Source of the DNA: Mobula hypostoma
Lineage: Eukaryota
Direction of reading: 5' to 3'
Length of the DNA: 64,000 nt
NCBI RefSeq assembly: GCF_963921235.1
Contig: NW_026948219.1
Span: 806,001 to 870,000 of the forward strand
Positions 30,724 to 64,000 of the stretch are shown here, piece after piece. The notes beneath the pieces are model-generated. The model saw nothing but the letters and a program-made list of their open reading frames with translations. It was not told the origin of the DNA and did no database searches. Both the position numbers and the translations under genes were made by a program. Each line of letters starts with the position of its first letter. Within the stretch, counting starts at the first letter, position 1.

Positions 30724-30862
30724 TATGGTTAGATGACTGAGTGAATCGCTTCACACATTCACAGCAGGTGAATGGCCTCTCCCCAGTGTGAACTCAATGA
30801 TGGACATTTGGTGGCAATGGCTGAGAGAATCTCTTCCCAAAGTCTGAGCAGGTGATCGGCCT

Positions 30863-32908: not shown

Positions 32909-32936
32909 TAGGTCAGATGAACGAGTGAATCCTTCC

Positions 32937-34331
32937 CTACAAATTCAGCAGATGACTAGCAATTTGCCCAACTAACTGGTGTGTCCACAGGTGGGAAGAC
33001 CGACTGAATCCCTTCTCACACACAGAACAGTTGAATGACCTTGTCCCAGTGTGAACTCGCTGATGTACCTTCAGATGAAATGACGAATTGAATCCCTTCC
33101 TACAGTCTGAGCAGGTGAACGGCCTCTCTCCAGTGTGAACTCGCTGATGTATGTTCAGTTGAGATGAACGAGTGAATCCCTTCCCACAGACTGAGCAGGT
33201 GAATGGCCTCTCTCCAGTGTGAACTCGCTGATGTACCTTCAGTTGAGATGAACGAGTGAATCCCTTCCCACAGTCTGAGCAGGTGAACGGCCTCTCTCCA
33301 GTGTGAACTCGCTGATGTATGTTCAGTTGAGATGAGCAATTGAAACCCTTCCCACAGTCTGAGCAGGTGAATGGCTTCTCTCCAGTGTGAACTCGCTGAT
33401 GTACCTTCAGTTGAGATGAACGAGTGAATCCCTTCCCACAGTCTGAGCAGGTGAACGGCCTCTCTCCAGTGTGAACTCGCTGATGTATGTTCAGTTGAGA
33501 TGAGCAAGTGAAACCCTTCCCACAGTCTGAGCAGATGAACGGCTTCTCTCCAGTGTGAACTCGCTGATGTACCTTCAGTTGAGATGAGCAAGTGAATCCC
33601 TTCCCACAGTCTGAGCAGGTGAACGGCTTCTCTCCAGTGTGAACTCGCTGATGTACCTTCAGATTAGATGACGAAGTGAATCCCTTCCCACAGTCTGAGC
33701 AGGTGAACGGCCTCTCTCCACTGTGAACTCGCTGATGTACCTTCAGTGCAGATGACAGAGTGAATCTCTTCCCACAGTCTGAGCAGGTGAATGGCCTCTC
33801 TCCAGTGTGAACTCGCTGATGTATGTTCAGTTGAGATGAGCAAGTGAAACCCTTCCCACAGTCTGAGCAGATGAACGGCTTCTCTCCAGTGTGAACTCGC
33901 TGATGTACCTTCAGTTGAGATGAGCAAGTGAATCCCTTCCCACAGTCTGAGCAGGTGAATGGCCTCTCTCCAGTGTGAACTCGCTGATGTACCTTCAGTG
34001 CAGATGACAGAGTGAATCTCTTCCCACAGTCTGAGCAGGTGAATGGCCACTCCCAGGTGTGATCTGACTGGTGTCTCAGTAACCGAGATGACAGAGTAAA
34101 TCCCTTCCCACAGACTGAGCAGGTGAATGGCCTCTCCCCAGTGTGAACTCGCTGATGCACCTTCAGTTGGGATGAGCAAGTGAATCCCTTCCTGCAGTCT
34201 GAGCACGTGAACGCCCTCTCGCCAGTGTGAACCGACCGGTGTATCCGTAGCTTATATGATTCAGCGAATCCCTTCCCACAGTCCAGGCAGGTGAACAGCC
34301 AGTCTCCAGTGTGAACTCGCTGGTGAGCCAT
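32937..34331 (-). CDS. Tandem C2H2 zinc-finger ORF, 15 intact fingers (duplicate of the 5' part of the downstream ORF)
   Basis: 464-aa ORF with an N-terminus nearly identical to that of 30863-32908; ends in a frameshifted finger ([18 protein letters not shown]). Confidence 0.75.
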
Positions 34332-34660
34332 TAGGTCAGATGAACGAGTGAATCCTTCCCTACAAATTCAGCAGATGACTAGCAATTTGCCCAACTAACT
34401 GGTGTGTCCACAGGTGGGAAGACCGACTGAATCCCTTCTCACACACAGAACAGTTGAATGACCTTGTCCCAGTGTAAACTTGCTGATGTACCTTCAGTTG
34501 AGATGACCAAGTGAATCCCTCCCCACAGTCGGAGCAGGAAGGATGATCGAGTGAATCCCTTGCTCCACTTCTTAAATATCTGTACAGAGACAGCAAAACT
34601 GTCGTGTTGTGTTCGAGATTCCAGTAGACAAATTCCTTGTCATTTTTAACCTGTAAAAAT
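34332..34660 (-). other. 5' part of the zinc-finger exon with putative splice acceptor and broken fingers
   Basis: Minus-strand ATTTTTACAG|G acceptor at ~34650, followed by [20 protein letters not shown] and VIC*ICREGF degenerate fingers. Confidence 0.55.
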
Positions 34661-36480: not shown

Positions 36481-36589
36481 TAATTCCCTGTCCTGAGCTC
36501 ATCTGGCTTTCCTACGATGCTTCTTGCATTGTGATATACACAGCTCAGCACATTCATCGCTCCATGCTCAACCATTTGATTGCTGACTC

Positions 36590-37374
36590 TATCTGAGGTC
36601 TGAACAACATCTGACTGGTGTCAAGAAAACAAACTCTCCCTCATTGTCATAAAAACAAAGGAGCTGATTGTGGACGACAGGAGGAATGGAGACAGGCTAA
36701 CCCCTATTGACATCAATGGATCTGGGGTTGGGAGGGTGAACAGCTTTAAGTTCCTCAGCATAAACATCACCGAGGATCTCACATGGTCTGTACATACCGG
36801 CTGTGTTGTGAAAAGAGCACAACAGCACCTCTTTCACCTCAGATGGTTGAAGAGGTTTGGGATGGGGACCCAAATCCTCAGAACTTTCTACAGGGACACA
36901 ACTGAGAGCATCCTGACTGGCTGCATCACTACCTGGTATGGGAACTGTACTTCCCTTAATCACAGGAACCTGCAGAGAGTGGTGTGGACAGCCCAGCACA
37001 TCTGTAGATGTGAACTTCCCACTATTCAGGACATTTACAGAGACAGGTGTGTAAAAAGGGCCCAAAGGATATTAGGGACCCAATTCACCACAACCACAAA
37101 CTGTTCCTGCTGCTCCCATCCAGGAAACGGTACCACAGCAAAAGGACCAACAGGCTCCGGGACATCATCTTCCACCAGGCCATCAGACTGATTAATTCAT
37201 GCTGATACAATTGCATTTCTATGTTATATTGACTGTCCTATGTACAAACTATTTATTATAAGTTACTGTAAATTACAAATTGCACACTTAGACAGAGACA
37301 TAACGTAAAGATTTCTACTCCTCATGTATATGAAGGACGAATGTAATAAAGTCAATTCAATTCAATTCAATTCA
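36590..37374 (+). mobile_element. Rex1/Babar-like LINE 3' end with (CAATT)n tail
   Basis: SFKFLSINITEDLTW, KRAQQHLFHLRWLK and ESILTGCITTWYGN; AATAAA followed by (CAATT)n. Confidence 0.8.
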
Positions 37375-37876
37375 CCCTCCCCACTATCTGTTCTGTCAGT
37401 CTGACTCCCATTCCCCCTACAACTTATTTTAACCACATCACCCTCTCCCCACACTAGCACTAGCAAGCTGTACCACTGGGATATTAGTCCCCTCTTGTTC
37501 TGTTCCCCTAACTAACAAATCCCCTATCACCCCTTTGACTTTCCTCTGCCAGGTAATTCCCCCCATAAGTTTCTAAAGTGGTCCACCTGCTGTTGTACGG
37601 GATAGCAACAAGAGTACTCTGCGATGGCTATTTAAACTCATTCCCCTTCCTGACTCTCACCCAGTTTCCTGTGTCCTGCACCTTGGGTGTAACTCACCTC
37701 TCTTCATGTCATATCTATCACCCCCTCCAACTCCTGGATGATCCGGAATTCATCCATTTCAAGTTCCAACTCCATAAAGTGCAGGGTTACAAGCTGCAGC
37801 TGGATGCACATCTTGTAGGTGAGGGCATCAGGGACACTGGAGGTCTCCCCACCTTCCCACCAATGTCCCTCTAATT

Positions 37877-38818
37877 TGTAATGACCCGTGTGCACATAAA
37901 GCTTGTATTATGCATTTTTTTAAACCAGTTTCTGTATTGTACATAAATATTTCCCCTGAACACTCCTGAGGAATTGAGGATATATAAAAAAATCTGCTGG
38001 TCACCAGGGGAGGGTCAGACTGTGGGAAGGGTGGTACTGAGGGAGGGTAATACTGTGGCAGGGAGGGTCACACTGTGGGAGGAGTGGTACTGAGGGAGGG
38101 TCACACCATGGGAGGGGTGGTACTGAGGGAGGGTCAGACTGTGGCAGGGAGGGTCACACTGTGGGAGGAGTGGTACTGAGGGAGGGTCACACCATGGGAG
38201 GGGTGGTACCAAGGGAGGGTCACACTGTGGGAGGGGTGGTACTGAAAAATCTTTTTTGAACCTATGTAGAATAATTGGGAGTGAATTGGAATTTTTTAGC
38301 TGAAGTAAACTCTGTCTTCAGTGGTTAGCTAAGTCAGGCTCATTACCAGTTCCCTGTGACTTGCAGAGAGCGACACTGAGAGCTGATAACATTATACATT
38401 ATACCCTCTTTTGAGTAAGGGGAGGAGGACTCGCCGATAAGGACAGGAATCAACATCTGTCTATAATTAAGTCAGGGCTTTGCAAAGGGAATAACTGATA
38501 AGGACCGGACAGTACATCCATCTGTAATTAAAACCTTGATTTTGCGAACACTCTTATCTAAGTAATTAAGTTTTGCACCAACAGACTTGATGGGTGTACC
38601 AGTTCAAATAACATCTTGCAATAGTAATGTATGGGGCTTACTATGTATAAATATACGGCTGTAACCGGACTAAGTCAGTCCGCTTGTCAGATGGTGGCAG
38701 TGCTTACGTGCCTTCCCTTTAACAACTGGGTCTCAAACTCCTGCAGGAGAATGCACAATAAACTGTGGTGACGATAAGAAGCTGGTCTCTCAAGTTTTAT
38801 TCAGATTCAACGTTAACA
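37877..38818 (+). mobile_element. 5' LTR of a class I ERV (5' boundary uncertain: 37877 or ~38243)
   Basis: TATAAATA at 38646 and AATAAA at 38757; ends GTTAACA at 38818, followed by TT and the PBS. Confidence 0.75.
38010..38245. repeat. G-rich ~33-bp minisatellite
   Basis: GGGAGGGTCACACTGTGGGAGGGGTGGTACTGA units with partial copies. Confidence 0.85.
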
Positions 38819-38820
38819 TT

Positions 38821-38838
38821 TGGTGTCACGAACAGGAT
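38821..38838 (+). promoter_or_regulatory. Primer-binding site complementary to the tRNA-Ser(CGA) 3' end
   Basis: TGGTGTCACGAACAGGAT versus expected TGGCGTCACGAACAGGAT (complement of ...ATCCTGTTCGTGACG-CCA, recalled vertebrate tRNA-Ser-CGA). Confidence 0.8.
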
Positions 38839-39180
38839 CTCAATATAGGGAGTGCCAAGCAGACGGGCTGAATAAGTGTCTGGACCACTCTGGGGACTGC
38901 GGAGACTGACTGGGTGCCCAATAGGTATTTTACCTTTTGTCACTCTCCCCTTAGTTCCTTTGGAGGTACGGTCCCTCACCCAAGGCTGATCGCATACCTT
39001 GACAGGATGGGGAAAGAATCTGTCGGGAGTCTCGTATAAGGTAGGGAAAATTTTACTAAGTGGGCAGGAGGCAGACGTGCCGGGTAAATTTATCAACTGA
39101 GCAGGAAGTGCCAGCTGGGTAAATTTATCTGATTGTTAATTGAGCAGAAGGCTTTGTGCCAGATAAGTTACTTGGAGAAC

Positions 39181-40740
39181 ACGGGTCAATTGCAGTCGAT
39201 TGATACGAGTGGGCCAGGAACAGCCCTACACAATATGTGTCAGAGTTTTCAAGACAAGGAAAAAGCTTTACGAATGTTGAGTGCAGGGCTGAATAAGAAA
39301 TTGGGGAACAAAATGAGGCCACTGGTGGGAAGCGGGTGTGGAACCTGGAATATTACCTCATGAAAACAAGCAGTAAATTTGATTTGGAAAAAGCACTGTG
39401 GAAAGAAGTGGAAATTGTTGAAAAGGGAATGGAAGGGAAAGGCAGATGTAAAGTGGAACAGTATATGATCAGCAAGTTGGAGGAATAATGCATGTGACAA
39501 AGGGATAGAGGTATGTACTCCAGAAGGAACGCCAAAGGTTGGGAGACGCTAAAAGCGGAGCATGAATGGGTGGATGGGCACCGAAAACGAGAGCAGGAAA
39601 AACAACGTAAGCAAAACAAGACCGAGATAGGAGAGAAGGGCAGGAACGTCAGTCTGAAGTTCAAACTGATTGGGAAACAAGGAATCCCAAACCCATGTCT
39701 GCATACCGACCCGGTTTGAGGACAGTGACCGTGATGAGCAGTGGGCACCCACCATAACCCCCACCCACCTTATCAGGGGCCAAGTGCACCCAATGCTCCT
39801 GAACCCCAATCCTCCCAGTACTCAGATACAGTGGCCGCTCGGGTCAAACAGCAGTGGCAGGGAAGGGGAGGTTCTCTATACCCTGAGATCCAGAAAGGGA
39901 ATACAGAGGATTATTCCGAGACAGGGAGGGAAGAATCCAATAAAACCCCAGAGTTAATGGCTCCACAAAGACAATTGCCGACCCGAATGCTGCCCAGTCC
40001 ACGAGTAGCTGAGGAGGGACAGTCCTCAATGATTCCTGTGTTTGCACCCTGGAAGCTTCAAGAAATGATAATGATTATGATTCAGGCCCCAGATAGAAAA
40101 GAAAGACCTGCACAGTTTGCTCAGTATGTCCTCAGTATTATACAAATGTATAATGCGACACCGCAAGATTTATTCTGTCTCTGCTGCATGATTCTCTCAG
40201 CTGATGAGGGGCAGAAATGCAAAGCAGAATTGAGATACCAAACCTATCAGGAGTTACAGGTGGGAAACCACAATGAGAATGAACAGACAGACCAGATTAT
40301 TCAAGCCTTGGAAGGGCTCTCCAGCAACCTGTAAACATCAGTAAAGTACCTGAATGCAAACCGAAGCCTGGGGAATCAGGACCAGACTATTGGGAGCGAT
40401 TTCTGGCCTGCTGCAGCACTTTCGCAGGACACCAAGCCTTCAATGATGGGAATCTGTCCCCCCAGTTTAATGCCTTTCTTCTCCTATGCTTACCAACTAA
40501 GTTAGCCAACATGATTAAGACAAATAATATGGATCAGCCTGACAATGACCAAAATCGAATGCGACGAGCTTTAATATATTATTGGGACCCGGCTTTCGAA
40601 TCCCGATCAACCCCGAAAGGAACCAATATTAAAGCTGAATATGTTCAGCGGGTAGAAGGATGCGAGCAGGCTATATCTGGGATCAGAAATGGGAACACAA
40701 ACCTACCACGCGACAGGTGGGGACAACAACCCGTTTAGAA
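39181..40740 (+). pseudogene. gag: ERV gag remnant
   Basis: ACG-GGT-CAA-TTG-CAG-TCG gives a (M)GQLQS myristoylation-type start with mutated ATG. Capsid-like PWKLQEM...APDRKERPAQF...YNATPQD and MHR-like KPKPGESGPDYWERF. Multiple stops and frameshifts. Confidence 0.7.
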
Positions 40741-40766
40741 ATTGACAAACAAGGACACTTCCTGCT

Positions 40767-43639
40767 GTGAGTACCACCCCTCAGGAAAAGCCCAATGAAA
40801 TATTGCAAGTTGCTGCAATTCCATTTACGGGGGCCACCACAACCACTCTTAATCAGGAAATAGTACTGGAAAAGGGATTCCAGCCATCAGACACTACAAT
40901 CACTCTGTCAGGGAGAGACTTGCTCTGTCCGCTGGAAGTCGAGATTCTATGCACGGACAAGGGTATCACCCTGGGACTAGCGAACAACCGACAGCTTCCC
41001 CAGTTACCAACCCCTCCAGTGGTGGGAACTTAATCTGGACTTCACTGCGTTTGAAACCCTTCTGCCAGAGGTCGACCCTCATGTGACTCTGCTATGACCC
41101 GACAGGGTACTCAACTGAGGAAAGCCAATATTATGCACCCCTCGAGGGACAGAAGTTCCCAGTCAACATGATTGGAGAGTTTACAGGAAGAGAGGGCAGT
41201 GCATTACTGGCTGAAGTTCCGGATTTCCTTTGGCGACAGACAGGACTGGTGGTTCCCCATACCACTGTTAGGGTTTTCCCTGGGTTCAAGCCAAAGAGCC
41301 TAGGGCTCCTTGTCTACACCCTGATGAAACAAGCCTCCAGCACCAAAGGAGAACCGGCAAGGCTTGGCCGCGGGCCAACTCCAATACTGGAAGGAGTCTG
41401 GGGTGAAGATGGGACATCTGGTAAGACACTCTTTTAATATTGACCGAACTCAAGACGTTGTATCCCATCTCTGGGCAAATTCAGGCCATGAAGTCAGCCG
41501 CACCAACTGTCCCGCTGTCCGGATCACCGTGAAAGGAGGACAGACTCTCCCATCCATTCCGCAATACCCCTTCAAGCCCGAGGCAACATTTTATGTGGAT
41601 GAAAGCTCTTTTGTGGATCCAGCAGGAAAACGATATTCTGGCTATGCGACAGTGACGGACAGTGAAATAGTTGAGCAGGCCTCTTTTGAGTCAGCTGTCT
41701 CCGCCCAGAAGGCTGAGCTGTTTGCTCTGACTCGTGCCTATATCCTAGCAACAGACTAAACTGCAAATGCTTACACAGACTCCCGTTATGCATTTGGAAT
41801 TGTGCGTGACTACGAGGCTCTCTGGGAACATGGGGATTCCTGACTTCCTCTGGCCACCCCATTAGTAATGCCACCTTTGTAAACAACTTACTCACTGCTC
41901 TACAGCTACCTCGAGTTTTGGCTATTATTACATGTGCAGCCCACACCCACAAGTCCGACCGGGTCACTAAAGGCAACGCTTTAGCAGATTAGACAGCGAA
42001 AAGTGCGACACAATCCTCAGTAGTTGTCGTCCCCTCGGGTTCCTGTCAAGCAACCCTCCGTGACTGAAGCAGAACGGTTTTCCCAGATATGCGGGAGGTA
42101 AATACTTTACGGGGGGACGTCTCTGAGGAGGAGCGCAAACTGTGGTCCCAGATGGAGGACCAGAAAGACCTCGCCCTAAGTTTTTGAATCACCCCAGCGA
42201 GACAGGTTTGTGTTCCTACACAGTTTTTACCAATATTGGTCGATTATATACATAATTGTAGACACCTGTAGAAGAATGAGGGGAGATTTGATAGAGGTTT
42301 ACAAAATTATGAGGGGAATAGACAGAGTAAATACAAGTAGGCTCTTTCCACAGATTAGGAGAGATAATTAAGAGAGGACATGGCTTTAGGGTGAAAGGAG
42401 AAAGGTTTAGGGGTAACATTAGGGGCAACTTCTTCACTCAGAGAGCAGTGGGAGTGAGGAACGAGCTGCCATCTGACGTGGTAAATGTGGGCTCACTCTT
42501 AAGTTTTAAGAATAAATTGGATAGATACATGGATGGGAGAGGTCTGGAGGTTATGGACTGGTTGCAGGTCAATGAGACCAGCGGAATAAAGTTTTGGCAC
42601 AGACTAGAAGGGCTGAATGGCCTGTTTTCTGTGCTGTAGTGTTCTGTGGTTCTGGGATTCTGGGAAAGGAGGGAATGGTTGGTAACCTGTATCCTGCACA
42701 CTGGGTATGACTCCCTTACCAAGTGAACCTTCTTCATGTCTACAAGTTGATTTTATTGAATTGCCTAGAGTACATTGCTATAGATACTGCTTAGTTATTA
42801 TAGATGCGTTTAGTAGATGGACTGAAGCTATTCCAACTACCAGTATGCTATGACTATAAGGAACGTATTATTACGGGAAATAATTCCCAGGTACGGCCTG
42901 CCAGAGATACTGAGCTCTGAAAATGGCCCACACTTAGTGGTGAAAGTAAACGAAGAGGAATGTAAAAAAATTAGCTATCAAGCAACAATTGCACTGTGTG
43001 CATCACCTGCGGGTCGCTGGCATAGTGGAGAGAGCCAATTGCACTCTGAAGAGTAAATTGGCCAAACTAACAGTGGAGACTGGACTCACTTGGTTGAAGG
43101 TCCTACCGTTAGCCCTATTCCACATGATGGTGACTCCCAGGGTAAAACAAGGTTGTCACCAGCTGAAATCATTTATGGATGGCCCATGAGGACACACTGG
43201 GGACCAAGACCTTGTGTACCACTGCTCCAAGAAAGTCTACCAGCAAAATTTGATATGCATACCCTAGGGGAAGAGATGGGAAAATACATATGCAAACTAA
43301 CAGCCATGATCATACTGCATGGCGGTGCAGGCTCGAAGGGCCGAATGGCCTAGTCCTGCACCTATTTTCTATGTTTCTAACCAAAATTTCCAAACATCAC
43401 ATTCACAGGTACGACAGACTTACAAGGAAGAGAACTACCCCCCAGAGAGGAGTGACTATCCCACCATAGAACCTGGGGATTTTGTCCTGATCAAGAACTG
43501 GGATCGAGGGAAACTTGGACGTCAGTGGAGAGGACCATATCAGGTGTTACTGACCACTCCCACAGCTGTGAAACTGAAGGGGCAATCTCGGTGGATACAT
43601 CGAACAGACTGCCAACATGTTAGTGAAGGAACTGAGTAG
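40767..43639 (+). pseudogene. pol: ERV pro-pol remnant: protease, 2H-like domain, RT deleted, RNase H, integrase (with CR1 inserts at ~42268-42650 and ~43303-43378)
   Basis: PF-TGATTTTL and SGRDLL (pro); FYVDESS, SAQKAELFALTRA and YTDSRYAFG (RNase H); QVDFIELP, IDAFSRWTEA, IIPRYGLPE, GIVERAN and WRGPYQVLLTTPTAVK (IN and GPY/F). Confidence 0.88.
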
Positions 43640-52999: not shown

Positions 53000-54100
53000 G
53001 GTAAATCACAAACACGACGAAGTCTGCAGACGCTGGAAATCCAAAGCAACACAAACAAAATACTGGCGGAACTCAGCAGGCCGGGCAGCATCTATCGAAA
53101 AGAGTCAACAGTCGACGTTTCCAGTTGAACCCTCCTTCAGGACTGAGATGAAATGGGGGAAATATCTGAATAAGATCGGGTCGGGCGAGGAAATGTCTCG
53201 CTGGAAGATGATAGGTGAAGTCAGGTAGGTGGGAAAGCGGAAGAGCTGAAGAAAATAGAATCTAATAGGAGAGGAGAGTGGAAAATATGAGAAAGGGATG
53301 GAGCAGTGGACCCAGAGAGAAGAGGTAAGCAGGTGAGAGGATGTGAAAAGTTAGAGAGGAAGAGAAGGAGTGGGAGGGAGGGGCGAGGGGGGAATTTGTT
53401 CACCAGAAGAAGAAATCGATAATCATACCATCAGGTTGGGGAGGGGGTACTCAGACGGAATATAAGGTACTGATCCTGGACCCTGAGGGTGGCTCATCTT
53501 GGCAGAAGAGGAGGTGATGGGTTGACATGTCGGAACAGGAATGGGAATAGGAATGAAAATGTTTGGACACCGGGAAGTCCCACTTGGAGCCCATAGTTCA
53601 AACGTTAATTTATTATTAAGCAGGTATCCGTAAACAACTCGAGATTCTTTTCTTCTCCAGAGAGCCGCAAAACAAAGAAAGAACATGAAAGTCGTTCAGA
53701 GAGAAAAAACAAACTCCCACCCCACCCCCACATCAAAAACAAACGGCATCCCGATTATCAACCCCAAAAACCCACCCCTCCCGCACAAAAGGGAACAATA
53801 ACATCGACCCCCCCCCCACAAAAAACACAACCCGACCCCGCACAACTGCGGAGGATCTGGTGAAGAAAATAGAATCTAATAGGAGAGGAGAGTGGAGAAT
53901 AGGAGAAAGGGATGGAGCAGTGGACCCAGAGAGAAGAGATCAGCAGGTGAGAGGATGTGAAAAGTCAGAGAGGAAGAGAGGGAGTGGGAGGGAGGGGTGA
54001 GGGGGAGATTTGTTCACCAGACGGAGAAATCGATATTCATACCATCAGGTTGGGGGGGGGGGCAGTCAGACGGAATATAAGGTGCTGATCCTGGACCCTG
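53000..54100 (-). mobile_element. Degenerate Penelope 3' fragments with an internal ~240-bp duplication
   Basis: Decayed pLTR/hammerhead at ~53110-53145; CATACCATCAGGTTGG...CAGACGGAATATAAGG (GIY-YIG C-terminus) occurs twice. Confidence 0.65.
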
Positions 54101-54429
54101 AATGATCCCCTGACTCTGAGAGGAAGGGGTGTCTATGGTCCACATTGTCAGGGTGTTGAGTTTACCAGGAGACAGAGACTGCAGGGACGGGAGGTTTTCT
54201 GTTGACTAATACACTGTGTGTGGACCCCGCTGGCAATTCTGGTGCTGTGACCCGAATGGAGACAAACACCACGCTGCCCACTCCACCAACAACACGGCAC
54301 AGCCGGACACATAACAGGGGACTTTACATCTCACAACACTGGATTCAGTGATGAAACCCGGGATTAATGTTGTTGTCCCACTGAAATCATCAGAAACGTC
54401 CATTCAGGTGTTTTTAAATACCAGCGCTC

Positions 54430-54745: not shown

Positions 54746-54876
54746 CAAATCCCAAAGTAAATGTCCGCTTTCTGATTTATTTCCATTTCCCTCCGAGGGA
54801 ACAAAATCTTTTACATCAGCGGTTGAGAAAATCACCTTTGTTCTACCTCCATGTGAGATGAAGAGAGGTGAGTTAC

Positions 54877-54954
54877 TAACAGAGAGAGACAAAAGGTAAA
54901 ATACCTATTGGGCGCCCGGTCGGTCTCCGCAGTCCCCAGAGTGGTGCAGACACT
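54877..54954 (-). mobile_element. ERV leader remnant continuing from the array
   Basis: Reverse complement matches 38875-38955 (GTGTCTG.ACCACTCTGGGGACTGCGGAGAC...CCCAATAGGTATTTTACCTTTTGTC). Confidence 0.85.
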
Positions 54955-57900
54955 AACTCAGTCTGTCTGCTTGACTCTCCCTGTACTGGGATCCTGTTCA
55001 TGATGCCAAATGTTAACATTGTATCTGAATAAAACTCAGTCTGTCTGCTTGACTCTCCCTGTACTGGGATCCTGTTCATGATGCCAAATGTTAACATTGA
55101 ATCTGAATAAAACTCAGTCTGTCTGCTTGGCTCTCCCTGTACTGGGATCCTGTTCATGATGCCAAATGTTAACATTAAATCTGAATAAAACTCAGTCTGT
55201 CTGCTTGGCTCTCCCTGTACTGGGATCCTGTTCATAACGCCAAATGTTAACATTGAATCTGAATAAAACTCAGTCTGTCTGCTTGGCTCTCCCTGTACTG
55301 GGATCCTGTTCATAACGCCAAATGTTAACATTGAATCTGAATAAAACTCAGTCTGTCTGCTTGGCTCTCCCTGTACTGGGATCCTGTTCATAACGCCAAA
55401 TGTTAACATTGAATCTGAATAAAACTCAGTCTGTCTGCTTGGCTCTCCCTGTCTGGGATCCTGTTCATAACGCCAAATGTTAACATTGAATCTGAATAAA
55501 ACTCAGTCTGTCTGCTTGGCTCTCCCTGTACTGGGATCCTGTTCATAACGCCAAATGTTAACATTAAATCTGAATAAAACTCAGTCTGTCTGCTTGACTC
55601 TCCCTGTACTGGGATCCTGTTCATAACGCCAAATGTTAACATTAAATCTGAATAAAACTCAGTCTGTCTGCTTGACTCTCCCTGTACTGGGATCCTGTTC
55701 ATAACGCCAAATGTTAACATTAAATCTGAATAAAACTCAGTCTGTCTGCTTGGCTCTCCCTGTACTGGGATCCTGTTCATAACGCCAAATGTTAACATTG
55801 AATCTGAATAAAACTCAGTCTGTCTGCTTGGCTCTCCCTGTACTGGGATCCTGTTCATAACGCCAAATGTTAACATTGAATCTGAATAAAACTCAGTCTG
55901 TCTGCTTGACTCTCCCTGTACTGGGATCCTGTTCATAACGCCAAATGTTAACATTGAATCTGAATAAAACTCAGTCTGTCTGCTTGGCTCTCCCTGTACT
56001 GGGATCCTGTTCATAACGCCAAATGTTAACATTGTATCTGAATAAAACTCAGTCTGTCTGCTTGGCTCTCCCTGTACTGGGATCCTGTTCATAATGCCAA
56101 ATGTTAACATTGAATCTGAATAAAACTCAGTCTGTCTGCTTGACTCTCCCTGTACTGGGATCCTGTTCATGACGCCAAATGTTAACATTGAATCTGAATA
56201 GAACTCAGTCTGTCTGCTTGACTCTCCCTGTACTGGGATCCTGTTCATAACGCCAAATGTTAACAATGTATCTGAATAAAACTCAGTCTGTCTGCTTGGC
56301 TCTCCCTGTACTGGGATCCTGTTCATAATGCCAAATGTTAGCATTGAATCTGAATAAAACTCAGTCTGTCTGCTTGGCTCTCCCTGTACTGGGATCCTGC
56401 TCATAACGCCAAATGTTAACATTGAATCTGAATAAAACTCAGTCTGTCTGCTTGACTCTCCCTGTACTGGGATCCTGCTCATAACGCCAAATGTTAACAT
56501 TGAATCTGAATAAAACTCAGTCTGTCTGCTTGACTCTCCCTGTACTGGGATCCTGTTCATAACGCCAAATGTTAACATTGAATCTGAATAAAACTCAGTC
56601 TGTCTGCTTGACTCTCCCTGTACTGGGATCCTGTTCATAACGCCAAATGTTAACATTGAATCTGAATAAAACTCAGTCTGTCTGCTTGGCTCTCCCTGTA
56701 CTGGGATCCTGTTCATAATGCCAAATGTTAACATTGAATCTGAATAAAACTCAGTCTGTCTGCTTGACTCTCCCTGTACTGGGATCCTGTTCATGATGCC
56801 AAATGTTAACATTGAATCTGAATAAAACTCAGTCTGTCTGCTTGACTCTCCCTGTACTGGGATCCTGTTCATGATGCCAAATGTTAACATTGAATCTGAA
56901 TAAAACTCAGTCTGTCTGCTTGGCTCTCCCTGTACTGGGATCCTGTTCATAATGCCAAATGTTAACATTGAATCTGAATAAAACTCAGTCTGTCTGCTTG
57001 ACTCTCCCTGTACTGGGATCCTGTTCATAACGCCAAATGTTAACATTGAATCTGAATAAAACTCAGTCTGTCTGCTTGACTCTCCCTGTACTGGGATCCT
57101 GTTCATAACGCCAAATGTTAACATTAAATCTGAATAAAACTCAGTCTGTCTGCTTGGCTCTCCCTGTACTGGGATCCTGTTCATGATGCCAAATGTTAAC
57201 ATTGAATCTGAATAAAACTCAGTCTGTCTGCTTGGCTCTCCCTGTACTGGGATCCTGTTCATAATGCCAAATGTTAACATTGAATCTGAATAAAACTCAG
57301 TCTGTCTGCTTGGCTCTCCCTGTACTGGGATCCTGTTCATAACGCCAAATGTTAACATTGAATCTGAATAAAACTCAGTCTGTCTGCTTGACTCTCCCTG
57401 TACTGGGATCCTGTTCATAACGCCAAATGTTAACATTGCATCTGAATAAAACTCAGTCTGTCTGCTTGGCTCTCCCTGTACTGGGATCCTGTTCATAACG
57501 CCAAATGTTAACATTGAATCTGAATAAAACTCAGTCTGTCTGCTTGGCTCTCCCTGTACTGGGATCCTGTTCATAACGCCAAATGTTAACATTGAATCTG
57601 AATAAAACTCAGTCTGTCTGCTTGGCTCTCCCTGTACTGGGATCCTGTTCATAACGCCAAATGTTAACATTGAATCTGAATAAAACTCAGTCTGTCTGCT
57701 TGGCTCTCCCTGTACTGGGATCCTGTTCATAACGCCAAATGTTAACATTGAATCTGAATAAAACTCAGTCTGTCTGCTTGGCTCTCCCTGTACTGGGATC
57801 CTGTTCATAACGCCAAATGTTAACATTGAATCTGAATAAAACTCAGTCTGTCTGCTTGGCTCTCCCTGTACTGGGATCCTGTTCATAACGCCAAATGTTA

Positions 57901-60900
57901 ACATTGAATCTGAATAAAACTCAGTCTGTCTGCTTGGCTCTCCCTGTACTGGGATCCTGTTCATAATGCCAAATGTTAACATTGAATCTGAATAAAACTC
58001 AGTCTGTCTGCTTGGCTCTCCCTGTACTGGGATCCTGTTCATAACGCCAAATGTTAACATTGAATCTGAATAAAACTCAGTCTGTCTGCTTGACTCTCCC
58101 TGTACTGGGATCCTGTTCATAACGCCAAATGTTAACATTAAATCTGAATAAAACTCAGTCTGTCTGCTTGGCTCTCCCTGTACTGGGATCCTGTTCATAA
58201 CGCCAAATGTTAACATTGAATCTGAATAAAACTCAGTCTGTCTGCTTGGCTCTCCCTGTACTGGGATCCTGTTCATGATGCCAAATGTTAACATTGAATC
58301 TGAATAAAACTCAGTCTGTCTGCTTGGCTCTCACTGTACTGGGATCCTGTTCATAACGCCAAATGTTAACATTGAATCTGAATAAAACTCAGTCTGTCTG
58401 CTTGACTCTCCCTGTACTGGGATCCTGTTCATAACGCCAAATGTTAACATTGCATCTGAATAAAACTCAGTCTGTCTGCTTGGCTCTCCCTGTACTGGGA
58501 TCCTGTTCATAACGCCAAATGTTAACATTGAATCTGAATAAAACTCAGTCTGTCTGCTTGGCTCTCCCTGTACTGGGATCCTGTTCGTAACGCCAAATGT
58601 TAACATTGAATCTGAATAAAACTCAGTCTGTCTGCTTGACTCTCCCTGTACTGGGATCCTGTTCGTAACGCCAAATGTTAACATTGAATCTGAATAAAAC
58701 TCAGTCCGTCTGCTTGGCTCTCCCTGTACTGGGATCCTGTTCATAACGCCAAATGTTAACATTGAATCTGAATAAAACTCAGTCCGTCTGCTTGGCTCTC
58801 CCTGTACTGGGATCCTGTTCATGACGCCAAATGTTAACATTGAATCTGAATAAAACTCAGTCTGTCTGCTTGGCTCTCCCGATACTGGGATCCTGTTCAT
58901 AACGCCAAATGTTAACATTGAATCTGAATAAAACTCAGTCTGTCTGCTTGGCTCTCCCTGTACTGGGATCCTGTTCATAACGCCAAATGTTAACATTGAA
59001 TCTGAATAAAACTCAGTCTGTCTGCTTGGCTCTCCCTGTACTGGGATCCTGTTCATAACGCCAAATGTTAACATTGTATCTGAATAAAACTCAGTCTGTC
59101 TGCTTGGCTCTCCCTGTACTGGGATCCTGTTCATAACGCCAAATGTTAACATTGAATCTGAATAAAACTCAGTCTGTCTGCTTGGCTCCCCCTGTACTGG
59201 GATCCTGTTCATAACGCCAAATGTTAACATTGTATCTGAATAAAACTCAGTCTGTCTGCTTGGCTCTCCCTGTACTGGGATCCTGTTCATAACGCCAAAT
59301 GTTAACATTGTATCTGAATAAAACTCAGTCTGTCTGCTTGGCTCTCCCTGTACTGGGATCCTGTTCATAACACCAAATGTTAGCATTGAATCTGAATAAA
59401 ACTCAGTCTGTCTGCTTGGCTCTCCCTGTACTGGGATCCTGTTCATAACGCCAAATGTTAACATTGTATCTGAATAAAACTCAGTCTGTCTGCTTGGCTC
59501 TCCCTGTACTGGGATCCTGTTCATAACGCCAAATGTTAACATTGTATCTGAATAAAACTCAGTCTGTCTGCTTGGCTCTCCCTGTACTGGGATCCTGTTC
59601 ATGACGCCAAATGTTGACATTGTATCTGAATAAAACTCAGTCTGTCTGCTTGGCTCTCCCTGTACTGGGATCCTGTTCATGATGCCAAATGTTAACATTG
59701 TATCTGAATAAAACTCAGTCTGTCTGCTTGGCTCTCCCTGTACTGGGATCCTGTTCATAACGCCAAATGTTAACAATGTATCTGAATAAAACTCAGTCTG
59801 TCTGCTTGGCTCTCCCTGTACTGGGATCCTGTTCATAACGCCAAATGTTAACATTGTATCTGAATAAAACTCAGTCTGTCTGCTTGACTCTCCCTGTACT
59901 GGGATCCTGTTCATGATGCCAAATGTTAACATTGTATCTGAATAAAACTCAGTCTGTCTGCTTGGCTCTCCCTGTACTGGGATCCTGTTCATGATGCCAA
60001 ATGTTAACATTGTATCTGAATAAAACTCAGTCTGTCTGCTTGACTCTCCCTGTACTGGGATCCTGTTCATAATGCCAAATGTTAACATTGTATCTGAATA
60101 AAACTCAGTCTGTCTGCTTGGCTCTCCCTGTACTGGGATCCTGTTCATAACGCCAAATGTTAACATTGAATCTGAATAAAACTCAGTCTGTCTGCTTGGC
60201 TCTCCCTGTACTGGGATCCTGTTCATAACGCCAAATGTTAACATTGTATCTGAATAAAACTCAGTCTGTCTGCTTGGCTCTCCATGTACTGGGATCCTGT
60301 TCATGATGCCAAATGTTAACATTGTATCTGAATAAAACTCAGTCTGTCTGCTTGACTCTCCCTGTACTGGGATCCTGTTCATAACGCCAAATGTTAACAT
60401 TGAATCTGAATAAAACTCAGTCTGTCTGCTTGGCTCTCCCTGTACTGGGATCCTGTTCATAACGCCAAATGTTAACATTGAATCTGAATAAAACTCAATC
60501 TGTCTGCTTGACTCTCCCTGTACTGGGATCCTGTTCATTACGCCAAATGTTAACATTGTATCTGAATAAAACTCAGTCTGTCTGCTTGGCTCTCCCTGTA
60601 CTGGGATCCTGTTCATAACGCCAAATGTTAACATTGAATCTGAATAAAACTCAGTCTGTCTGCTTGGCTCTCCCTGTACTGGGATCCTGTTCATAACGCC
60701 AAATGTTAACATTGAATCTGAATAAAACTCAGTCTGTCTGCTTGGCTCTCCCGATACTGGGATCCTGTTCATAACACCAAATGTTAACATTGTATCTGAA
60801 TAAAACTCAGTCTGTCTGCTTGGCTCTCCCTGTACTGGGATCCTGTTCATAACGCCAAATGTTAACATTGTATCTGAATAAAACTCAGTCTGTCTGCTTG

Positions 60901-62288
60901 GCTCTCCCTGTACTGGGATCCTGTTCATGATGCCAAATGTTAACATTGTATCTGAATAAAACTCAGTCTGTCTGCTTGACTCTCCCTGTACTGGGATCCT
61001 GTTCATGATGCCAAATGTTAGCATTGAATCTGAATAAAACTCAGTCTGTCTGCTTGGCTCTCCCTGTACTTGGATCCTGTTCATAACGCCAAATGTTAGC
61101 AATGTATCTGAATAAAACTCAGTCTGTCTGCTTGACTCTCCCTGTACTGGGATCCTGTTCATGATGCCAAATGTTAGCATTGAATCTGAATAAAACTCAG
61201 TCTGTCTGCTTGACTCTCCCTGTACTGGGATCCTGTTCATAACGCCAAATGTTAACATTGAATCTGAATAAAACTCAGTCTGTCTGCTTGACTCTCCCTG
61301 TACTGGGATCCTGTTCATGATGCCAAATGTTAACATTGAATCTGAATAAAACTCAGTCTGTCTGCTTGGCTCCCCCTGTACTGGGATCCTGTTCATAACG
61401 CCAAATGTTAAAGTTGTATCTGAATAAAACTCAGTCTGTCTGCTTGGCTCTCCCTGTACTGGGATCCTGTTCATGATGCCAAATGTTAACATTGAATCTG
61501 AATAAAACTCAGTCTGTCTGCTTGACTCTCCCTGTACTGGGATCCTGTTCATAACGCCAAATGTTAACATTGTATCTGAATAAAACTCAGTCTGTCTGCT
61601 TGACTCTCCCTGTACTGGGATCCTGTTCATAACGCCAAATGTTAACATTGAATCTGAATAAAACTCAGTCTGTCTGCTTGGCTCTCCCTGTACTGGGATC
61701 CTGTTCATGATGCCAAATGTTAACATTGAATCTGAATAAAACTCAGTCTGTCTGCTTGACTCTCCCTGTACTGGGATCCTGTTCATAACGCCAAATGTTA
61801 ACATTGAATCTGAATAAAACTCAGTCTGTCTGCTTGGCTCTCCCGATACTGGGATACTGTTCATAACGCCAAATGTTAACATTGTATCTGAATAAAACTC
61901 AGTCTGTCTGCTTGGCTCTCCCTGTACTGGGATCCTGTTCATAACGCCAAATGTTAACATTGAATCTGAATAAAACTCAGTCTGTCTGCTTGGCTCTCCC
62001 TATACTGGGATCCTGTTCATAACGCCAAATGTTAACATTAAATCTGAATAAAACTCAGTCTGTCTGCTTGGCTCTCCCTGTACTGGGATCCTGTTCATAA
62101 CGCCAAATGTTAAAGTTGTATCTGAATAAAACTCAGTCTGTCTGCTTGACTCTCCCTGTACTGGGATCCTGTTCATAACGCCAAATGTTAAAGTTGTATC
62201 TGAATAAAAGTCAGTCTGTCTGCTTGACTCTCCCTGTACTGGGATCCTGTTCGTGATGCCAAATGTTAAAGTTGTATCTGAATAAAAC
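54955..62288 (-). repeat. 94 x 78-bp tandem array of ERV U5 end + tRNA-Ser PBS + leader
   Basis: Unit (minus strand) TTTTATTCAGATTCAATGTTAACA-TT-TGGCGTTATGAACAGGAT-CCCAGTACAGGGAGAGCCAAGCAGACAGACTGAG aligns with 38795-38872. The span equals 94 x 78 minus a single 1-bp deletion near 55452. Confidence 0.95.
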
Positions 62289-62700
62289 ACGGGAGACCAG
62301 CTTCTTATCGTCCCCACAGTTTATTGTACATTCTCCTGCAGGAGTTTGAGACCCAGTTGTCAAAGGGAAGGCACGTAAACACTGCCACCATCTGACAAGT
62401 GGACTGACTTAGTCAGGTTACAGCCGTATATTAATACACAGTAAGCCCCATAGATTACTATTGCAAGATGTTATTTGAACTGGTACGCCCATCAAGTCTG
62501 TTGGTGCAAAACTTAATTACTTAGATAAGAGAGTTCAAAAAATGAAGGTTTAAATTACAGATGGATGTGCTGTCCAGTCCTTATCAGTTATTCCCTTTGC
62601 AAGGCCCTGATTTAATTGCAGAGAGATGTTCATTCCTGTCCTTATCGGCGAGTCCTCCTCCCTTTACTCGATCGAGGGTACAAAGTATAATGTTATCAAC
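62264..62700 (-). mobile_element. ERV LTR (inverted paralog of ~38380-38818), 5'-truncated
   Basis: Continuous reverse-complement similarity, e.g. GAGACCAGCTTCTTATCGTC and CCATCAAGTCTGTTGGTGCAAAACTTAATTACTTAGATAAGA. Confidence 0.9.
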
Positions 62701-62719
62701 TACTGAGAGTACAATGTAT

Positions 62720-64000
62720 TCATCCAGCTACAGCATGTAACCCTTCACATTAAGGAGTTGGAACTTGAAATGGATGAATTCTGGATCATCCAGGAGTTGG
62801 AGGGGGTGATAGATATGACATGAAGAGAGGTGAGTTACACCCAAGGTGCGGGACACAGGAAACTGGGTGAGAGTCGGGAAGGGGAATGAGGTTAAATAAC
62901 CATCGCAGAGTACTCTAGTTGCCATCCCACACAACAACAGGTGGATCCACTTTAGAAACTGTTGGGGGGATTACTGACAGAGGAAAGTCAAAGGGGTGAG
63001 AGGGGATTCGTTAGTGAAGGGAACAGAACAAGAGGGGACTAATATCCCAGTGGTGAGGCTCGCTAGTGCTAGTGTGGGGAGAGGGTGATGTGGTTAAAAT
63101 AAGTTGTAGGGGGAATGGGAGCCAGAATGACAGAACAGATAGTGGGGAGGGTGAATTGAATTGAATTGACTTTATTACATACATCCTTCATATACATGAG
63201 GAGTAGAAATCTTTACATTATGTCTCCATCTAAATGTGCAATGTGTAATTTATAGTCATTTGTAATAAATAGTTTGTACACAGGACAGTCAATATAACAT
63301 AGAAATGCAATTGTATCAGCATGAATTAATCAGTCTGATGGCCTGGTGGAAGATGATGTCCCGGAGCCTGTTGGTCCTTTTGCTGTGGTACCGTTTCCTG
63401 GATGGTAGCAGCAGGAACAGTTTGTGGTTGTGGTGAATTGGGTCCCCAATATCCTTTGGGCCCTTTTTACACACCTGTCTCTGTAAATGTCCTGAATAGT
63501 GGGAAGTTCACATCTACAGATGAGCTGGGCTGTCCACACCACTCTCTGCAGGTTCCTGTGATTAAGGGAAGTACAGTTCCCATACCAGGCAGTGATGCAG
63601 CCAGTCAGGATGCTCTCAGTTGTGTCCCTGTAGAAAGTTATTAGGACTTGGGGCCCCATCCCAAACTTCTTCAACCATCTGAGGTGAAAGAGGTGCTGCT
63701 GTGCTCTTTTCACAACACAGCCGGTATGTACAGACCATGTGAGATCCTCGGTGATGTTTATGCTGAGGAACTTAAAGCTGTTCACCCTCTCAACCCCAGA
63801 TCCATTGATGTCAATAGGGGTTAGCCTGTCTCCATTCCTCCTGTCGTCCACAGTCAGCTCCTTTGGTTTTGTGACAATGAGGGAGAGTTTGTTTTCTTGA
63901 CACCAGTCAGATGTTGTTCAGACCTCAGACAGAGTCAGCAATCAAATGGTTGAGCATGGAGCGATGAATGTGCTGAGCTGTGTATATCACAATGCAAGAA
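62720..64000 (-). repeat. Inverted segmental duplicate of 36521-37810 (CR1 ORF1 scrap plus Rex1-like 3' end)
   Basis: ORFs 36670-37191 and 63330-63851 are both 173 aa with 8 differences; window position 64000 maps to 36521. Confidence 0.92.

What the first reader, a model, noticed from the sequence alone, without database searches (positions are those of the whole stretch)
54955..62288. A 7.3-kb satellite made of 94 retroviral primer-binding sites (LTR U5 / tRNA-Ser PBS / leader junction)
Seen: the 78-bp unit, read on the minus strand, is the last ~24 nt of LTR U5 (ending TTAACA), then TT, an 18-nt PBS and ~34 nt of leader. It aligns with the single-copy junction of the provirus at 38795-38872. 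The array is bracketed in the correct order by an LTR (62264-62700) and further leader (54877-54954), so it amplified in place, with GTT microhomology at the unit junction. Known: the PBS is the ERV element targeted by 3' tRNA fragments and by PBS-binding zinc-finger repressors (e.g. mouse ZFP809 at PBS-Pro). Inference: ~94 PBS copies beside a ZNF-locus promoter could be a multivalent repressor platform, a tRNA/tRF sink or a small-RNA template. Neutral minisatellite expansion is equally possible.
Basis: partly seen in the sequence, partly recalled or inferred. Interest (0 to 1): 0.9.

Follow-up and report, generated by a model that had tools for sequence, protein, structure and literature searches.

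The report
Dead retrovirus primer site amplified 94-fold
A 78-base piece of a dead endogenous retrovirus, the end of its LTR plus its tRNA-Ser primer-binding site, has been copied head to tail 94 times at one spot; this is most likely an ordinary neutral minisatellite, not a functional device.

Summary
Bases 54955-62288 hold 94 tandem 78-bp units (97% alike). Read on the minus strand, each unit is 24 nt of LTR U5 end, TT, an 18-nt TGG-initiated primer-binding site (PBS) and 34 nt of leader. The array sits in the right order between a 435-bp LTR (62698-62264) and more leader (54956-54882). A single-copy homologue lies at 38795-38872, at the head of a degraded gammaretrovirus-like provirus.

The PBS matches the 3' end of a eukaryotic tRNA-Ser(CGA) gene fetched with the tools at 17/18 positions (provirus copy, array unit 1) or 16/18 (commonest unit).

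The array-bearing copy is therefore probably a truncated inverted duplicate with no gag or pol, not a second provirus.

Nothing supports a function:
- The PBS is the most variable part of the unit.
- At most 3 of 94 units are perfect tRNA complements.
- CpGs are depleted.
- No KRAB domain or ZNF promoter adjoins the array in the window.
- The array ORFs have no homologues.

Best reading: in-place slippage and unequal exchange. It is a new member of a known kind (retroelement-derived minisatellite). Interest is modest.

The parts
54955..62288 (-). Array of 94 tandem 78-bp units. In ERV sense (window minus strand), unit 1 starts at 62287 and unit 94 ends at 54957. Each unit is 24 nt of U5 end, TT, an 18-nt PBS-like segment and 34 nt of leader.
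62264..62698 (-). LTR copy B, 435 bp with TG...CA ends. Its last 24 nt are also the first 24 nt of unit 1. The AATAAA hexamer is present; the TATA-like motif differs from copy A.
   Evidence: The two termini are imperfect inverted repeats of each other (read).
54882..54956 (-). Single-copy leader remnant after the array. It is homologous to 38873-38947 with 8% mismatch.
54858..54875 (-). An 18-nt patch identical to a motif in the shared upstream flank (37690-37707 on the plus strand; 62820-62837 on the minus strand). It is inserted in the leader a few bases before ERV homology is lost.
   Evidence: 3 matches in the window, 0 expected by chance. Also.
62721..64000 (-). Upstream flank B, the tail of a LINE ORF2-type gene (ORF 63330-63851, Pfam ALKBH8_N). 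It runs to the window edge.
36521..37806 (+). Upstream flank A, the same LINE tail (ORF 36670-37191). It differs from flank B at 4.3% of aligned positions (BLAST identity 95.1%).
37807..38383 (+). Spacer of 577 bp between flank A and LTR A, including a G-rich 33/86-bp minisatellite at 38008-38245. The matching spacer in copy B is only 22 bp.
38384..38818 (+). LTR copy A, 435 bp with TG...CA ends. It differs from copy B at 7.8% of positions, with no gaps.
38795..38872 (+). Single-copy homologue of the array unit. The PBS lies at 38821-38838.
39969..40645 (+). Broken gag-like region of provirus A. It matches the gag-sized open frame of the relative L017 in 2 pieces in 2 different frames.
40899..43639 (+). 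Broken pol-like region of provirus A (RT, RNase H, integrase). It matches in 8 pieces in all 3 frames, with 14 stops inside the matched pieces, and is shorter than the relative's pol.
30731..34538 (-). Neighbouring host C2H2 zinc-finger array, about 45 fingers with an 84-bp period. It is not adjacent to the 78-bp array.

Best explanation
The array is a locus-specific minisatellite that arose in the host genome from a 78-bp segment of the 5' end of a long-dead class I (gammaretrovirus-like) endogenous retrovirus.

Shown:
- The unit is the U5-end / TT / PBS / leader junction.
- The other copy of the same LTR-leader has exactly one unit.
- The array lies in order between LTR and leader.
- The array-bearing copy shares its upstream LINE-derived flank with the other copy in inverted orientation and lacks gag and pol.

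Inferred:
1. An inverted duplication copied the LINE tail, the LTR and about 130-170 nt of post-LTR sequence.
2. The event was probably replication-based template switching. This fits the 18-nt templated patch in the leader and the 8-nt inverted match at the LTR edge.
3. In the derived copy, one tandem duplication of 78 bp formed at G/TT microhomology. The 12-nt perfect palindrome at the U5 end may have helped.
4. Unequal sister-chromatid exchange or slippage then expanded and partly homogenised the array to 94 units.

The array evolves neutrally, is probably methylated, and has no sequence-specific function.
For: - Array and register.
- Homology and order.
- Shared inverted flank, which is the tail of a LINE ORF2 (PF09004, relatives carrying PF00078).
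- No retroviral coding matches on the array side; gag- and pol-like matches occur only at 39969-43639.
- Local homogenisation: neighbouring units differ by 2.17 positions against 2.70 overall, and 0 of 5000 permutations reach the observed value.
- No constraint on the PBS: diversity is 0.052 in the PBS, 0.037 in the U5 part and 0.023 in the leader.
- CpG observed/expected is 0.24 in the array against 0.51 for the window.
- Unit boundaries coincide with neither the U5/PBS border nor the PBS 3' end, so they do not look like reverse-transcription landmarks (read).
- The 18-nt patch occurs 3 times with 0 expected.
- The 8-nt inverted match abuts the LTR.
- A two-unit strand folds better than shuffles (z = -3.5), through the palindrome.
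- The long ORFs in the array follow from 78 = 26 x 3 plus one stop-free frame, and they have no homologues.
Against: - LTR divergence between the two copies (7.8%) is higher than flank divergence (4.3%). One duplication event does not predict this, unless rates differ or the flanks were homogenised.
- The spacer between flank and LTR is 577 bp in one copy and 22 bp in the other, and it is not homologous next to the LTR. An extra rearrangement must be assumed.
- The host genome could not be searched, so it is unknown whether the unit occurs at other loci.
- Copy number in an assembly of a 7.3-kb near-identical array may be inexact.
- No expression, methylation or chromatin data were available, so absence of function is inferred from sequence alone.
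Confidence: 0.78

Rival explanations
1. The array is a functional platform. The many PBS copies recruit a PBS-recognising zinc-finger repressor, soak up 3' tRNA-Ser fragments or tRNA-Ser, or serve as a small-RNA (piRNA-type) source, and so influence silencing of this ERV family or of the surrounding ZNF cluster.
For: - Each unit carries an 18-nt segment 15-17/18 complementary to a tRNA-Ser(CGA) 3' end. Three units are 18/18 to the A-variant tRNA-Ser ends found in L010 and L003.
- An LTR with an AATAAA hexamer lies directly upstream in the sense orientation, so LTR-driven transcripts would run into the array.
- A large C2H2 zinc-finger gene lies in the window.
- PBS-directed silencing by ZFP809 and by 3' tRNA fragments is established in mouse (PMC4358406, PMC7472051).
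Against: - The PBS columns are the most variable part of the unit.
- No unit is a perfect complement of the G-variant tRNA-Ser(CGA) end.
- CpG decay is advanced.
- The TATA-like motif of the adjoining LTR differs from that of the other copy.
- No KRAB or other effector domain was found near the ZNF array, which is more than 20 kb away.
- The known PBS-binding repressor recognises PBS-Pro, not a Ser-type PBS.
- There is no evidence that the array exists at more than this one place.
Confidence: 0.07
2. The array is real but its length or internal order is an assembly product. A shorter or longer minisatellite was mis-sized when near-identical 78-bp units were assembled.
For: - Units are 97% alike, and runs of up to six identical units occur. 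This is the situation in which assemblers mis-size arrays.
- No read-level data could be examined.
Against: - There are 45 distinct unit types when the array is cut in a fixed 78-bp frame; a few of these reflect the 1-base register shift after unit 88. In the anchored register, 25 columns vary.
- Spatial structure is non-random, the edge units are distinctive, and there is one 77-bp unit.
- Both junctions to unique sequence are clean.
- This level of variant structure is what long-read assemblies of true arrays show.
Confidence: 0.1
3. The repeat was made by the virus. Aberrant strand transfers during reverse transcription produced a multi-PBS leader before integration, and the array copy is an independent integration next to another copy of the same LINE.
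For: - Tandem repeats in untranslated regions of LTR elements have been attributed to abnormal strand transfer (PMC7004042).
- A related provirus in another assembly (L017) has a 263-bp x 3.3 repeat in its leader.
- The sequence immediately upstream of the two LTRs is not homologous.
- The LTRs are more diverged than the flanks.
Against: - Unit boundaries do not coincide with PBS or U5 borders.
- Both LTRs lie downstream of the same LINE tail in the same relative orientation, which independent integrations would rarely give.
- The array side has no gag, pol, env or 3' LTR.
- A genome of 94 leader repeats with a 7.3-kb leader is far outside retroviral norms (general knowledge).
- The repeat in L017 does not include the PBS.
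Confidence: 0.04

Closest known systems
Satellites and minisatellites that grow out of short tandem repeats in untranslated regions of LTR retrotransposons (Ogre/Tat elements of legumes; PMC7004042, PMC3305785)
   Same: A non-coding stretch of an LTR retroelement is amplified head to tail into a kb-scale array, still attached to recognisable element sequence. Unequal exchange then homogenises it.
   Different: The plant cases lie in the 3' untranslated region of Ty3/gypsy elements. The short arrays already exist inside many element copies and travel with them. Here the host is a vertebrate and the element is a class I ERV. The amplified piece is the U5/PBS/leader junction, the only other copy in the window has one unit, and only one locus is known.
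Transposable-element-derived tandem repeats in vertebrate genomes (PMC3389668, PMC6947457, PMC3218096)
   Same: It belongs to the general class: a fragment of a dead interspersed repeat becomes the monomer of a mini- or macrosatellite by local duplication.
   Different: My paper searches found no case centred on a retroviral primer-binding site. The searches were limited to open-access full text.
PBS-directed silencing: ZFP809/TRIM28 at PBS-Pro (PMC4358406) and 3' tRNA fragments pairing with the PBS (PMC7472051, PMC12853362)
   Same: The repeated unit contains the sequence class that these systems recognise, an 18-nt complement of a tRNA 3' end next to U5.
   Different: The PBS is of Ser type. 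It is imperfect in nearly all units and is the fastest-varying part of the unit. No KRAB zinc-finger gene was found in the window, and binding or pairing was not testable here.
Leader tandem repeat of a related provirus (locus L017, record CM054020.1 of assembly GCA_028641065.1)
   Same: It is a class I ERV with the same ...CA / T-run / TGG junction and a tandem repeat in the 5' leader, 263 bp x 3.3 copies at 98%. Its pol is the best match to the window's pol pieces.
   Different: The repeat starts about 330 nt downstream of the PBS and does not contain it. There are only 3 copies, inside an otherwise complete-looking provirus. Pol identity to the window's element is only about 31-46%.
Su(Hw) binding-site cluster in the 5' untranslated region of Drosophila gypsy (recalled from general knowledge, not tested here)
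   Same: A tandem cluster of short motifs lies just downstream of the PBS of an LTR element and is bound by a multi-zinc-finger protein.
   Different: The gypsy cluster has about a dozen short sites, is carried by every element copy and is demonstrably bound. Here there are 94 long units at one dead locus and no binding evidence.

Membership tests
Retroviral 5' LTR / PBS / leader junction (class I, gammaretrovirus-like ERV) | LTR bounded by TG...CA with short terminal inverted repeats | tested here: met
   Both copies start TG and end CA. The first and last 10 nt are imperfect inverted repeats: 8/10 in copy A, and 9/10 using the commonest unit (read). Both LTRs are 435 bp and align without gaps.
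Retroviral 5' LTR / PBS / leader junction (class I, gammaretrovirus-like ERV) | 18-nt PBS starting TGG, 2 nt after the LTR, complementary to the 3' end of a host tRNA | tested here: met
   CA, TT, then TGG... in the provirus copy and in every unit. Match to the tRNA-Ser(CGA) gene of L015 plus CCA is 17/18 for the provirus and unit 1, and 16/18 for the commonest unit. Caveat: the comparator tRNA comes from an unidentified eukaryote in a metagenome, not from the host. The three tRNA genes in the window do not match.
Retroviral 5' LTR / PBS / leader junction (class I, gammaretrovirus-like ERV) | gag-pol of retroviral type downstream of the leader | tested here: met
   Met for copy A only. Pfam MLVIN_C at 4.5e-13. 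PDB sequence hits to MLV/XMRV RT-RNase H at 5e-7 and to MLV integrase C-terminal domain at 9e-9. gag-like and pol-like tblastn matches to L017 frames. Copy B, the array side, has none.
Retroviral 5' LTR / PBS / leader junction (class I, gammaretrovirus-like ERV) | Matching 3' LTR and target-site duplication (complete provirus) | tested here: not met
   Self-BLAST finds only the two 5'-type LTR copies and no third copy in the window. No env-like match was found. Neither copy is a complete provirus within the window.
Retroelement-derived minisatellite | Head-to-tail units homologous to a single-copy segment of the element, flanked in order by the adjoining element sequence | tested here: met
Satellite DNA in the strict sense | Long arrays at several loci or a substantial genome fraction | not testable with these tools
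   No vertebrate genome could be searched by DNA. Exact-pattern scans of viral and prokaryotic collections found nothing. The array ORFs have no homologues among predicted proteins.
KRAB-ZFP / PBS repressor target (ZFP809 type) | A KRAB zinc-finger protein that recognises this PBS | tested here: inconclusive
   The window's ZNF ORFs and the 2 kb upstream of them show only C2H2 fingers. No KRAB, SCAN or BTB domain was found. The known system targets PBS-Pro (PMC4358406). Binding cannot be tested from sequence.
3' tRNA-fragment target site | Perfect or near-perfect complementarity of the site to the 18-22 nt 3' end of a mature host tRNA | tested here: inconclusive
   Against L015 tRNA-Ser(CGA): no unit has 0 mismatches, 6 have 1, 76 have 2 and 12 have 3. 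Against the A-variant ends of L010 and L003: 3 units have 0 mismatches, 76 have 1 and 15 have 2 (hand count). The host tRNA set is unknown.

The most novel reading that the evidence does not exclude
The 94-fold PBS array, transcribed from its adjoining LTR or from read-through, acts as a decoy or nucleation site for PBS-directed defence, either 3' tRNA-Ser fragments or a PBS-Ser-recognising zinc-finger protein. If so, a dead ERV fragment has been turned into a multivalent sensor or sink within a zinc-finger gene cluster of a non-mammalian vertebrate.
Probability: 0.05. Interest if true: 0.75.

Novelty: new member of a known kind. Interest (0 to 1): 0.3.

Why it matters
As it stands, this is a tidy textbook-style example of how a minisatellite is born from a retroelement fragment. 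The single-copy progenitor state (38795-38872) and the 94-copy derived state sit in the same 64-kb window. The junctions are clean, there is microhomology at the unit boundary, and there are signs of a complex replication-based rearrangement.

The locus could serve as a natural test for PBS-directed silencing outside mammals, because it concentrates 94 near-PBS sites in one place. Nothing in the sequence says that such silencing acts on it.

For genome annotation, two points matter. The long ORFs in the array (177, 963 and 1209 aa) are artefacts of a 78 = 26 x 3 period. The 'second provirus' is a truncated inverted duplicate.

Tried and rejected
- **Array ORFs as a handle on other arrays.** An exact look-up and a homology search of the 177-aa array ORF found nothing.
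- **Host identification by exact look-up.** The 681-aa ZNF ORF is not on record.
- **Homology search with the 198-aa ORF at 39738-40331.** No hits and no PDB hit. tblastn with the relative's gag-sized frame later showed a gag-like region at 39969-40645.
- **Copy number of the flank family.** The LINE-tail ORF search gave only 52-63% relatives, with teleost names. The host's own copies are not in the collection, so whether the flank is a young high-copy family could not be settled.
- **Full-text search for the 12-nt PBS core and its complement.** Only unrelated primers came back.
- **The three tRNA genes in the window** (Ser-GCT, an intron-bearing Arg-like gene, Glu-CTC). None fits the PBS.
- **Pfam on about 50 stop-free pieces** between 34.3 and 54.9 kb and in the first 30 kb. 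Only MLVIN_C, a weak RNase_H, ALKBH8_N, RVT_1 and C2H2 fingers were found. There was no env and no KRAB.
- **The 18-mer at 54858-54875 as a host first exon.** On the plus strand it reads as a start codon followed by a splice-donor-like GTGAGT, and I considered a ZNF first exon. I rejected this because its other two copies lie in the LINE 3' region.
- **Reverse-transcription origin of the repeat.** Considered and ranked low because the unit borders do not coincide with RT landmarks.
- **The bacterial promoter/terminator scan** is not applicable to this sequence.
- **Exact-pattern scans of viral and prokaryotic collections.** No matches.
Full report
**Observation**

Tandem Repeats Finder reports one array at 54955-62288: period 78, 94.0 copies, 97% matches, no indels. 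I re-sliced the array on an internal anchor. There are 94 anchors, spaced 78 bp apart 92 times and 77 bp once. With that register there are 94 units and 25 variable columns. The commonest real unit is present 22 times, and unit 88 has a one-base deletion. GGATCC occurs in 93 units and GTTAAC in 84.

**Anatomy of the unit**

Read on the minus strand, each unit has four parts:
- 24 nt that end in CA;
- TT;
- an 18-nt stretch beginning TGG;
- 34 further nt.

The same 78 nt occur once on the plus strand at 38795-38872. There they form the end of a 435-bp repeat (38384-38818, TG...CA), the TT, a PBS at 38821-38838, and the start of a leader.

Self-BLAST aligns 38384-38871(+) with 62698-62211(-) at 91.2%, and 38793-38947(+) with 55036-54882(-) at 87.7%. 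The array is therefore preceded by the rest of the LTR and followed by the rest of the leader, in the correct order.

The first and last ten bases of the LTR are imperfect inverted repeats of one another. This supports the LTR borders even though no 3' LTR is available. In most units the U5 end plus TT forms a perfect 12-nt palindrome containing GTTAAC. Two units folded as single-stranded DNA are more stable than shuffles (z = -3.5).

The unit's 5' edge lies 33 nt after the AATAAA hexamer of the LTR. The 24-nt 'U5 tail' may therefore be most of a short U5. This is an inference.

**The element is retroviral**

Downstream of the plus-strand copy:
- One stop-free piece hits Pfam MLVIN_C (4.5e-13) and the solved MLV integrase C-terminal domain (8.8e-9).
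- Another piece hits MLV/XMRV RT-RNase H chains (5e-7; weak Pfam RNase_H).

A full-library protein search gave as best hit a 1225-aa pol, P0001. Its locus is L017, record CM054020.1 of assembly GCA_028641065.1. I recall this assembly as a skate genome but could not verify that.

Using that relative's stop-free frames as tblastn queries and reporting counts only:
- The window has a gag-like region at 39969-40645, in 2 pieces in 2 frames.
- It has a pol-like region at 40899-43627, in 8 pieces in all 3 frames, with 14 stops inside the matched pieces. It is shorter than the relative's pol.
- There is no env-like match.
- No third LTR copy exists in the window.

Copy A is thus an old, heavily broken class I provirus without a recognisable 3' end. 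The array side has no retroviral coding matches at all.

**Which tRNA**

The three tRNA genes in the window do not fit the 18-mer. They are Ser-GCT, an intron-bearing Arg-like gene and Glu-CTC.

I scanned the metagenome collection with a degenerate pattern that covers only the variants observed in the window, plus a generic T-loop. It returned 15 loci. ARAGORN called tRNA-Ser(CGA) in L015 and tRNA-Ser(TGA) in L010 at the matches. L003 carries two intron-bearing Ser-type genes.

The L015 gene is of eukaryotic type, with a T-run terminator. Mismatches to its last 15 nt plus CCA are:

| Copy | Mismatches |
|---|---|
| Provirus PBS | 1 |
| Array unit 1 | 1 |
| Commonest unit | 2 |
| All 94 units | 0 perfect, 6 with one, 76 with two, 12 with three |

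Against the A-variant Ser ends of L010 and L003, 3 units are perfect, 76 have one mismatch and 15 have two. This is my hand count.

The caveat is that the comparator tRNAs are not from the host.

Self-BLAST also aligns 36521-37806(+) with 64000-62721(-) at 95.1%, up to the window edge. Both stretches carry a 173-aa ORF that hits Pfam ALKBH8_N. Its relatives, 52-63% identical and with teleost names, combine RVT_1 with that domain. The shared flank is therefore the tail of a LINE ORF2, in the same orientation as the ERV in both copies.

Two LTR-PBS-leader copies, each just downstream of the same LINE tail and facing each other 16 kb apart, are best explained by an inverted duplication. Two separate integrations are less likely.

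Three details suggest a complex, replication-type rearrangement on the array side:
- **Spacer length.** The spacer between flank and LTR is 22 bp there and 577 bp in copy A, where it includes a G-rich minisatellite at 38008-38245.
- **Inverted 8-mer.** The 8 nt next to LTR B are the exact inverted copy of the 8 nt next to LTR A. This was noticed post hoc, and about 0.3 such matches are expected anywhere in the spacer.
- **Templated patch.** An 18-nt motif from the LINE 3' region reappears inside the leader at 54858-54875. That is a few bases before ERV homology is lost; there are 3 copies in the window and 0 expected.

Points against a single simple event:
- The LTRs differ by 7.8% and the flanks by only 4.3%.
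- The bases immediately upstream of the two LTRs are not collinear.

**Dynamics of the array**

- Units differ from each other by 3.5% on average.
- Neighbours are more alike than random pairs: 2.17 against 2.70 differences, with 0 of 5000 permutations as low.
- The three units at each edge are the most deviant.
- The commonest unit differs from the single-copy homologue at 11 of 78 positions. This exceeds the divergence of the LTR or the single-copy leader, as expected if array-specific changes were spread by homogenisation.
- Diversity is highest in the PBS columns (0.052), against 0.037 for U5+TT and 0.023 for the leader.
- CpG observed/expected is 0.24 in the array and 0.51 in the window.

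These are the marks of unequal exchange acting on a neutrally decaying, probably methylated sequence. There is no sign of constraint on tRNA complementarity.

The unit borders (G|TT at both ends in the array copy) coincide with neither the U5/PBS border nor the PBS 3' end. This argues against an origin in reverse transcription.

**Functional ideas**

The three long minus-strand ORFs in the array follow from 78 = 26 x 3 and one stop-free frame. They have no homologues.

The only zinc-finger array in the window is at 30731-34538 on the minus strand, more than 20 kb from the 78-bp array. It has about 45 fingers, read as two ORFs of 464 and 681 aa. Neither it nor the 2 kb upstream shows a KRAB, SCAN or BTB domain.

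'Beside a ZNF promoter' is thus not shown. A paralogous ZNF gene may lie beyond 64000 if the duplication continues, but that is inference.

PBS-directed silencing is real in mouse (PMC4358406, PMC7472051, PMC12853362). Nothing here ties it to this locus.

**Comparison with what is known**

Expansion of short tandem repeats from untranslated regions of LTR retroelements into satellites is well documented in plants (PMC7004042, PMC3305785). Transposable-element-derived tandem repeats are common in vertebrates (PMC3389668, PMC6947457, PMC3218096).

The related provirus L017 carries a 263-bp x 3.3 repeat in its leader, but that repeat does not include the PBS. I found no published PBS-centred array, within the limits of the searchable library.

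I therefore file this as a new member of a known kind: a retroelement-derived minisatellite whose monomer happens to be the U5/PBS/leader junction.

**Limits**

- The host species and its genome could not be queried.
- Exact-pattern scans of viral and prokaryotic collections were empty.
- Whether the unit exists elsewhere, whether the array is polymorphic, and whether it is transcribed or marked all remain open.

- Before I had a tool-derived comparator, I recalled a human tRNA-Ser sequence from memory in my reasoning. It was not used as evidence.
- This is equivalent to the complement of the tool-derived tRNA end.
- In the script, that complement was computed as a yardstick for counting mismatches. 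It was neither printed nor saved.

Noticed in passing
window 30731-34538 (-): An 84-bp-period array of about 45 C2H2 zinc fingers, read as two ORFs (32937-34331, 464 aa; 30863-32908, 681 aa) separated by a stop. No KRAB, SCAN or BTB domain was found in the ORFs or in the 2 kb upstream.
   Followed up: partly
window 10311-10392 (-), 11250-11338 (+), 16652-16723 (+): Three tRNA genes within 6.5 kb: Ser-GCT, an 89-nt intron-bearing gene with a TCG-type anticodon loop, and Glu-CTC. All score above the Rfam tRNA threshold. None matches the ERV primer-binding site.
   Followed up: yes
window 17676-17987: A second tandem repeat with the same 78-bp period (4 copies, 92%) but an unrelated sequence. It lies inside mechanical ORFs on both strands that have no Pfam hit.
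   Followed up: partly
window 38008-38245 (+): A G-rich 33/86-bp minisatellite lies in the 577-bp spacer directly upstream of LTR copy A. The spacer, and with it this repeat, is absent from the array-bearing copy, whose spacer is 22 bp.
   Followed up: partly
window 54858-54875 (-), 62820-62837 (-), 37690-37707 (+): An identical 18-mer occurs three times (0 expected by chance). Two copies lie in the shared LINE 3' region. The third is inserted in the ERV leader just before homology ends, and may be a templated insertion at a rearrangement junction.
   Followed up: partly
window 62699-62709 (-) and 38375-38382 (+): The 8 nt abutting LTR copy B are the exact inverted copy of the 8 nt abutting LTR copy A. 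This may be a micro-inversion or chance; about 0.3 such matches are expected somewhere in the spacer.
   Followed up: partly
window 28944-29423 (+): An ORF with a reverse-transcriptase domain (Pfam RVT_1, 1.5e-13), followed by a 244-aa ORF at 29427-30161. This is another retroelement fragment next to the ZNF gene.
   Followed up: no
window 7862-8366 and 52791-52981: Two further minisatellites with a 28-bp period: 18 copies at 93% and 6.8 copies at 96%. Their sequences are unrelated.
   Followed up: no
window 53247-53486 / 53861-54101; 22033-22640 / 53009-53575: A 240-bp direct repeat at 93% lies just inside the array-side arm. There is also 77% similarity between the 22-kb and 53-kb regions. 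This is an unclassified interspersed repeat.
   Followed up: no
L017 6043-16100 (record CM054020.1 of GCA_028641065.1): The closest pol relative sits in a provirus-like element. Its two LTR segments are 100% identical over 293 nt, and it has long stop-free gag-, pol- and env-sized frames. Its leader carries a 263-bp x 3.3 tandem repeat at 6877-7737.
   Followed up: partly
L003 3860-4172 (metagenome contig OKKB01000112.1): Two intron-bearing Ser-type tRNA genes lie 207 bp apart in tandem in a eukaryote-like metagenome contig. ARAGORN did not call them.
   Followed up: no
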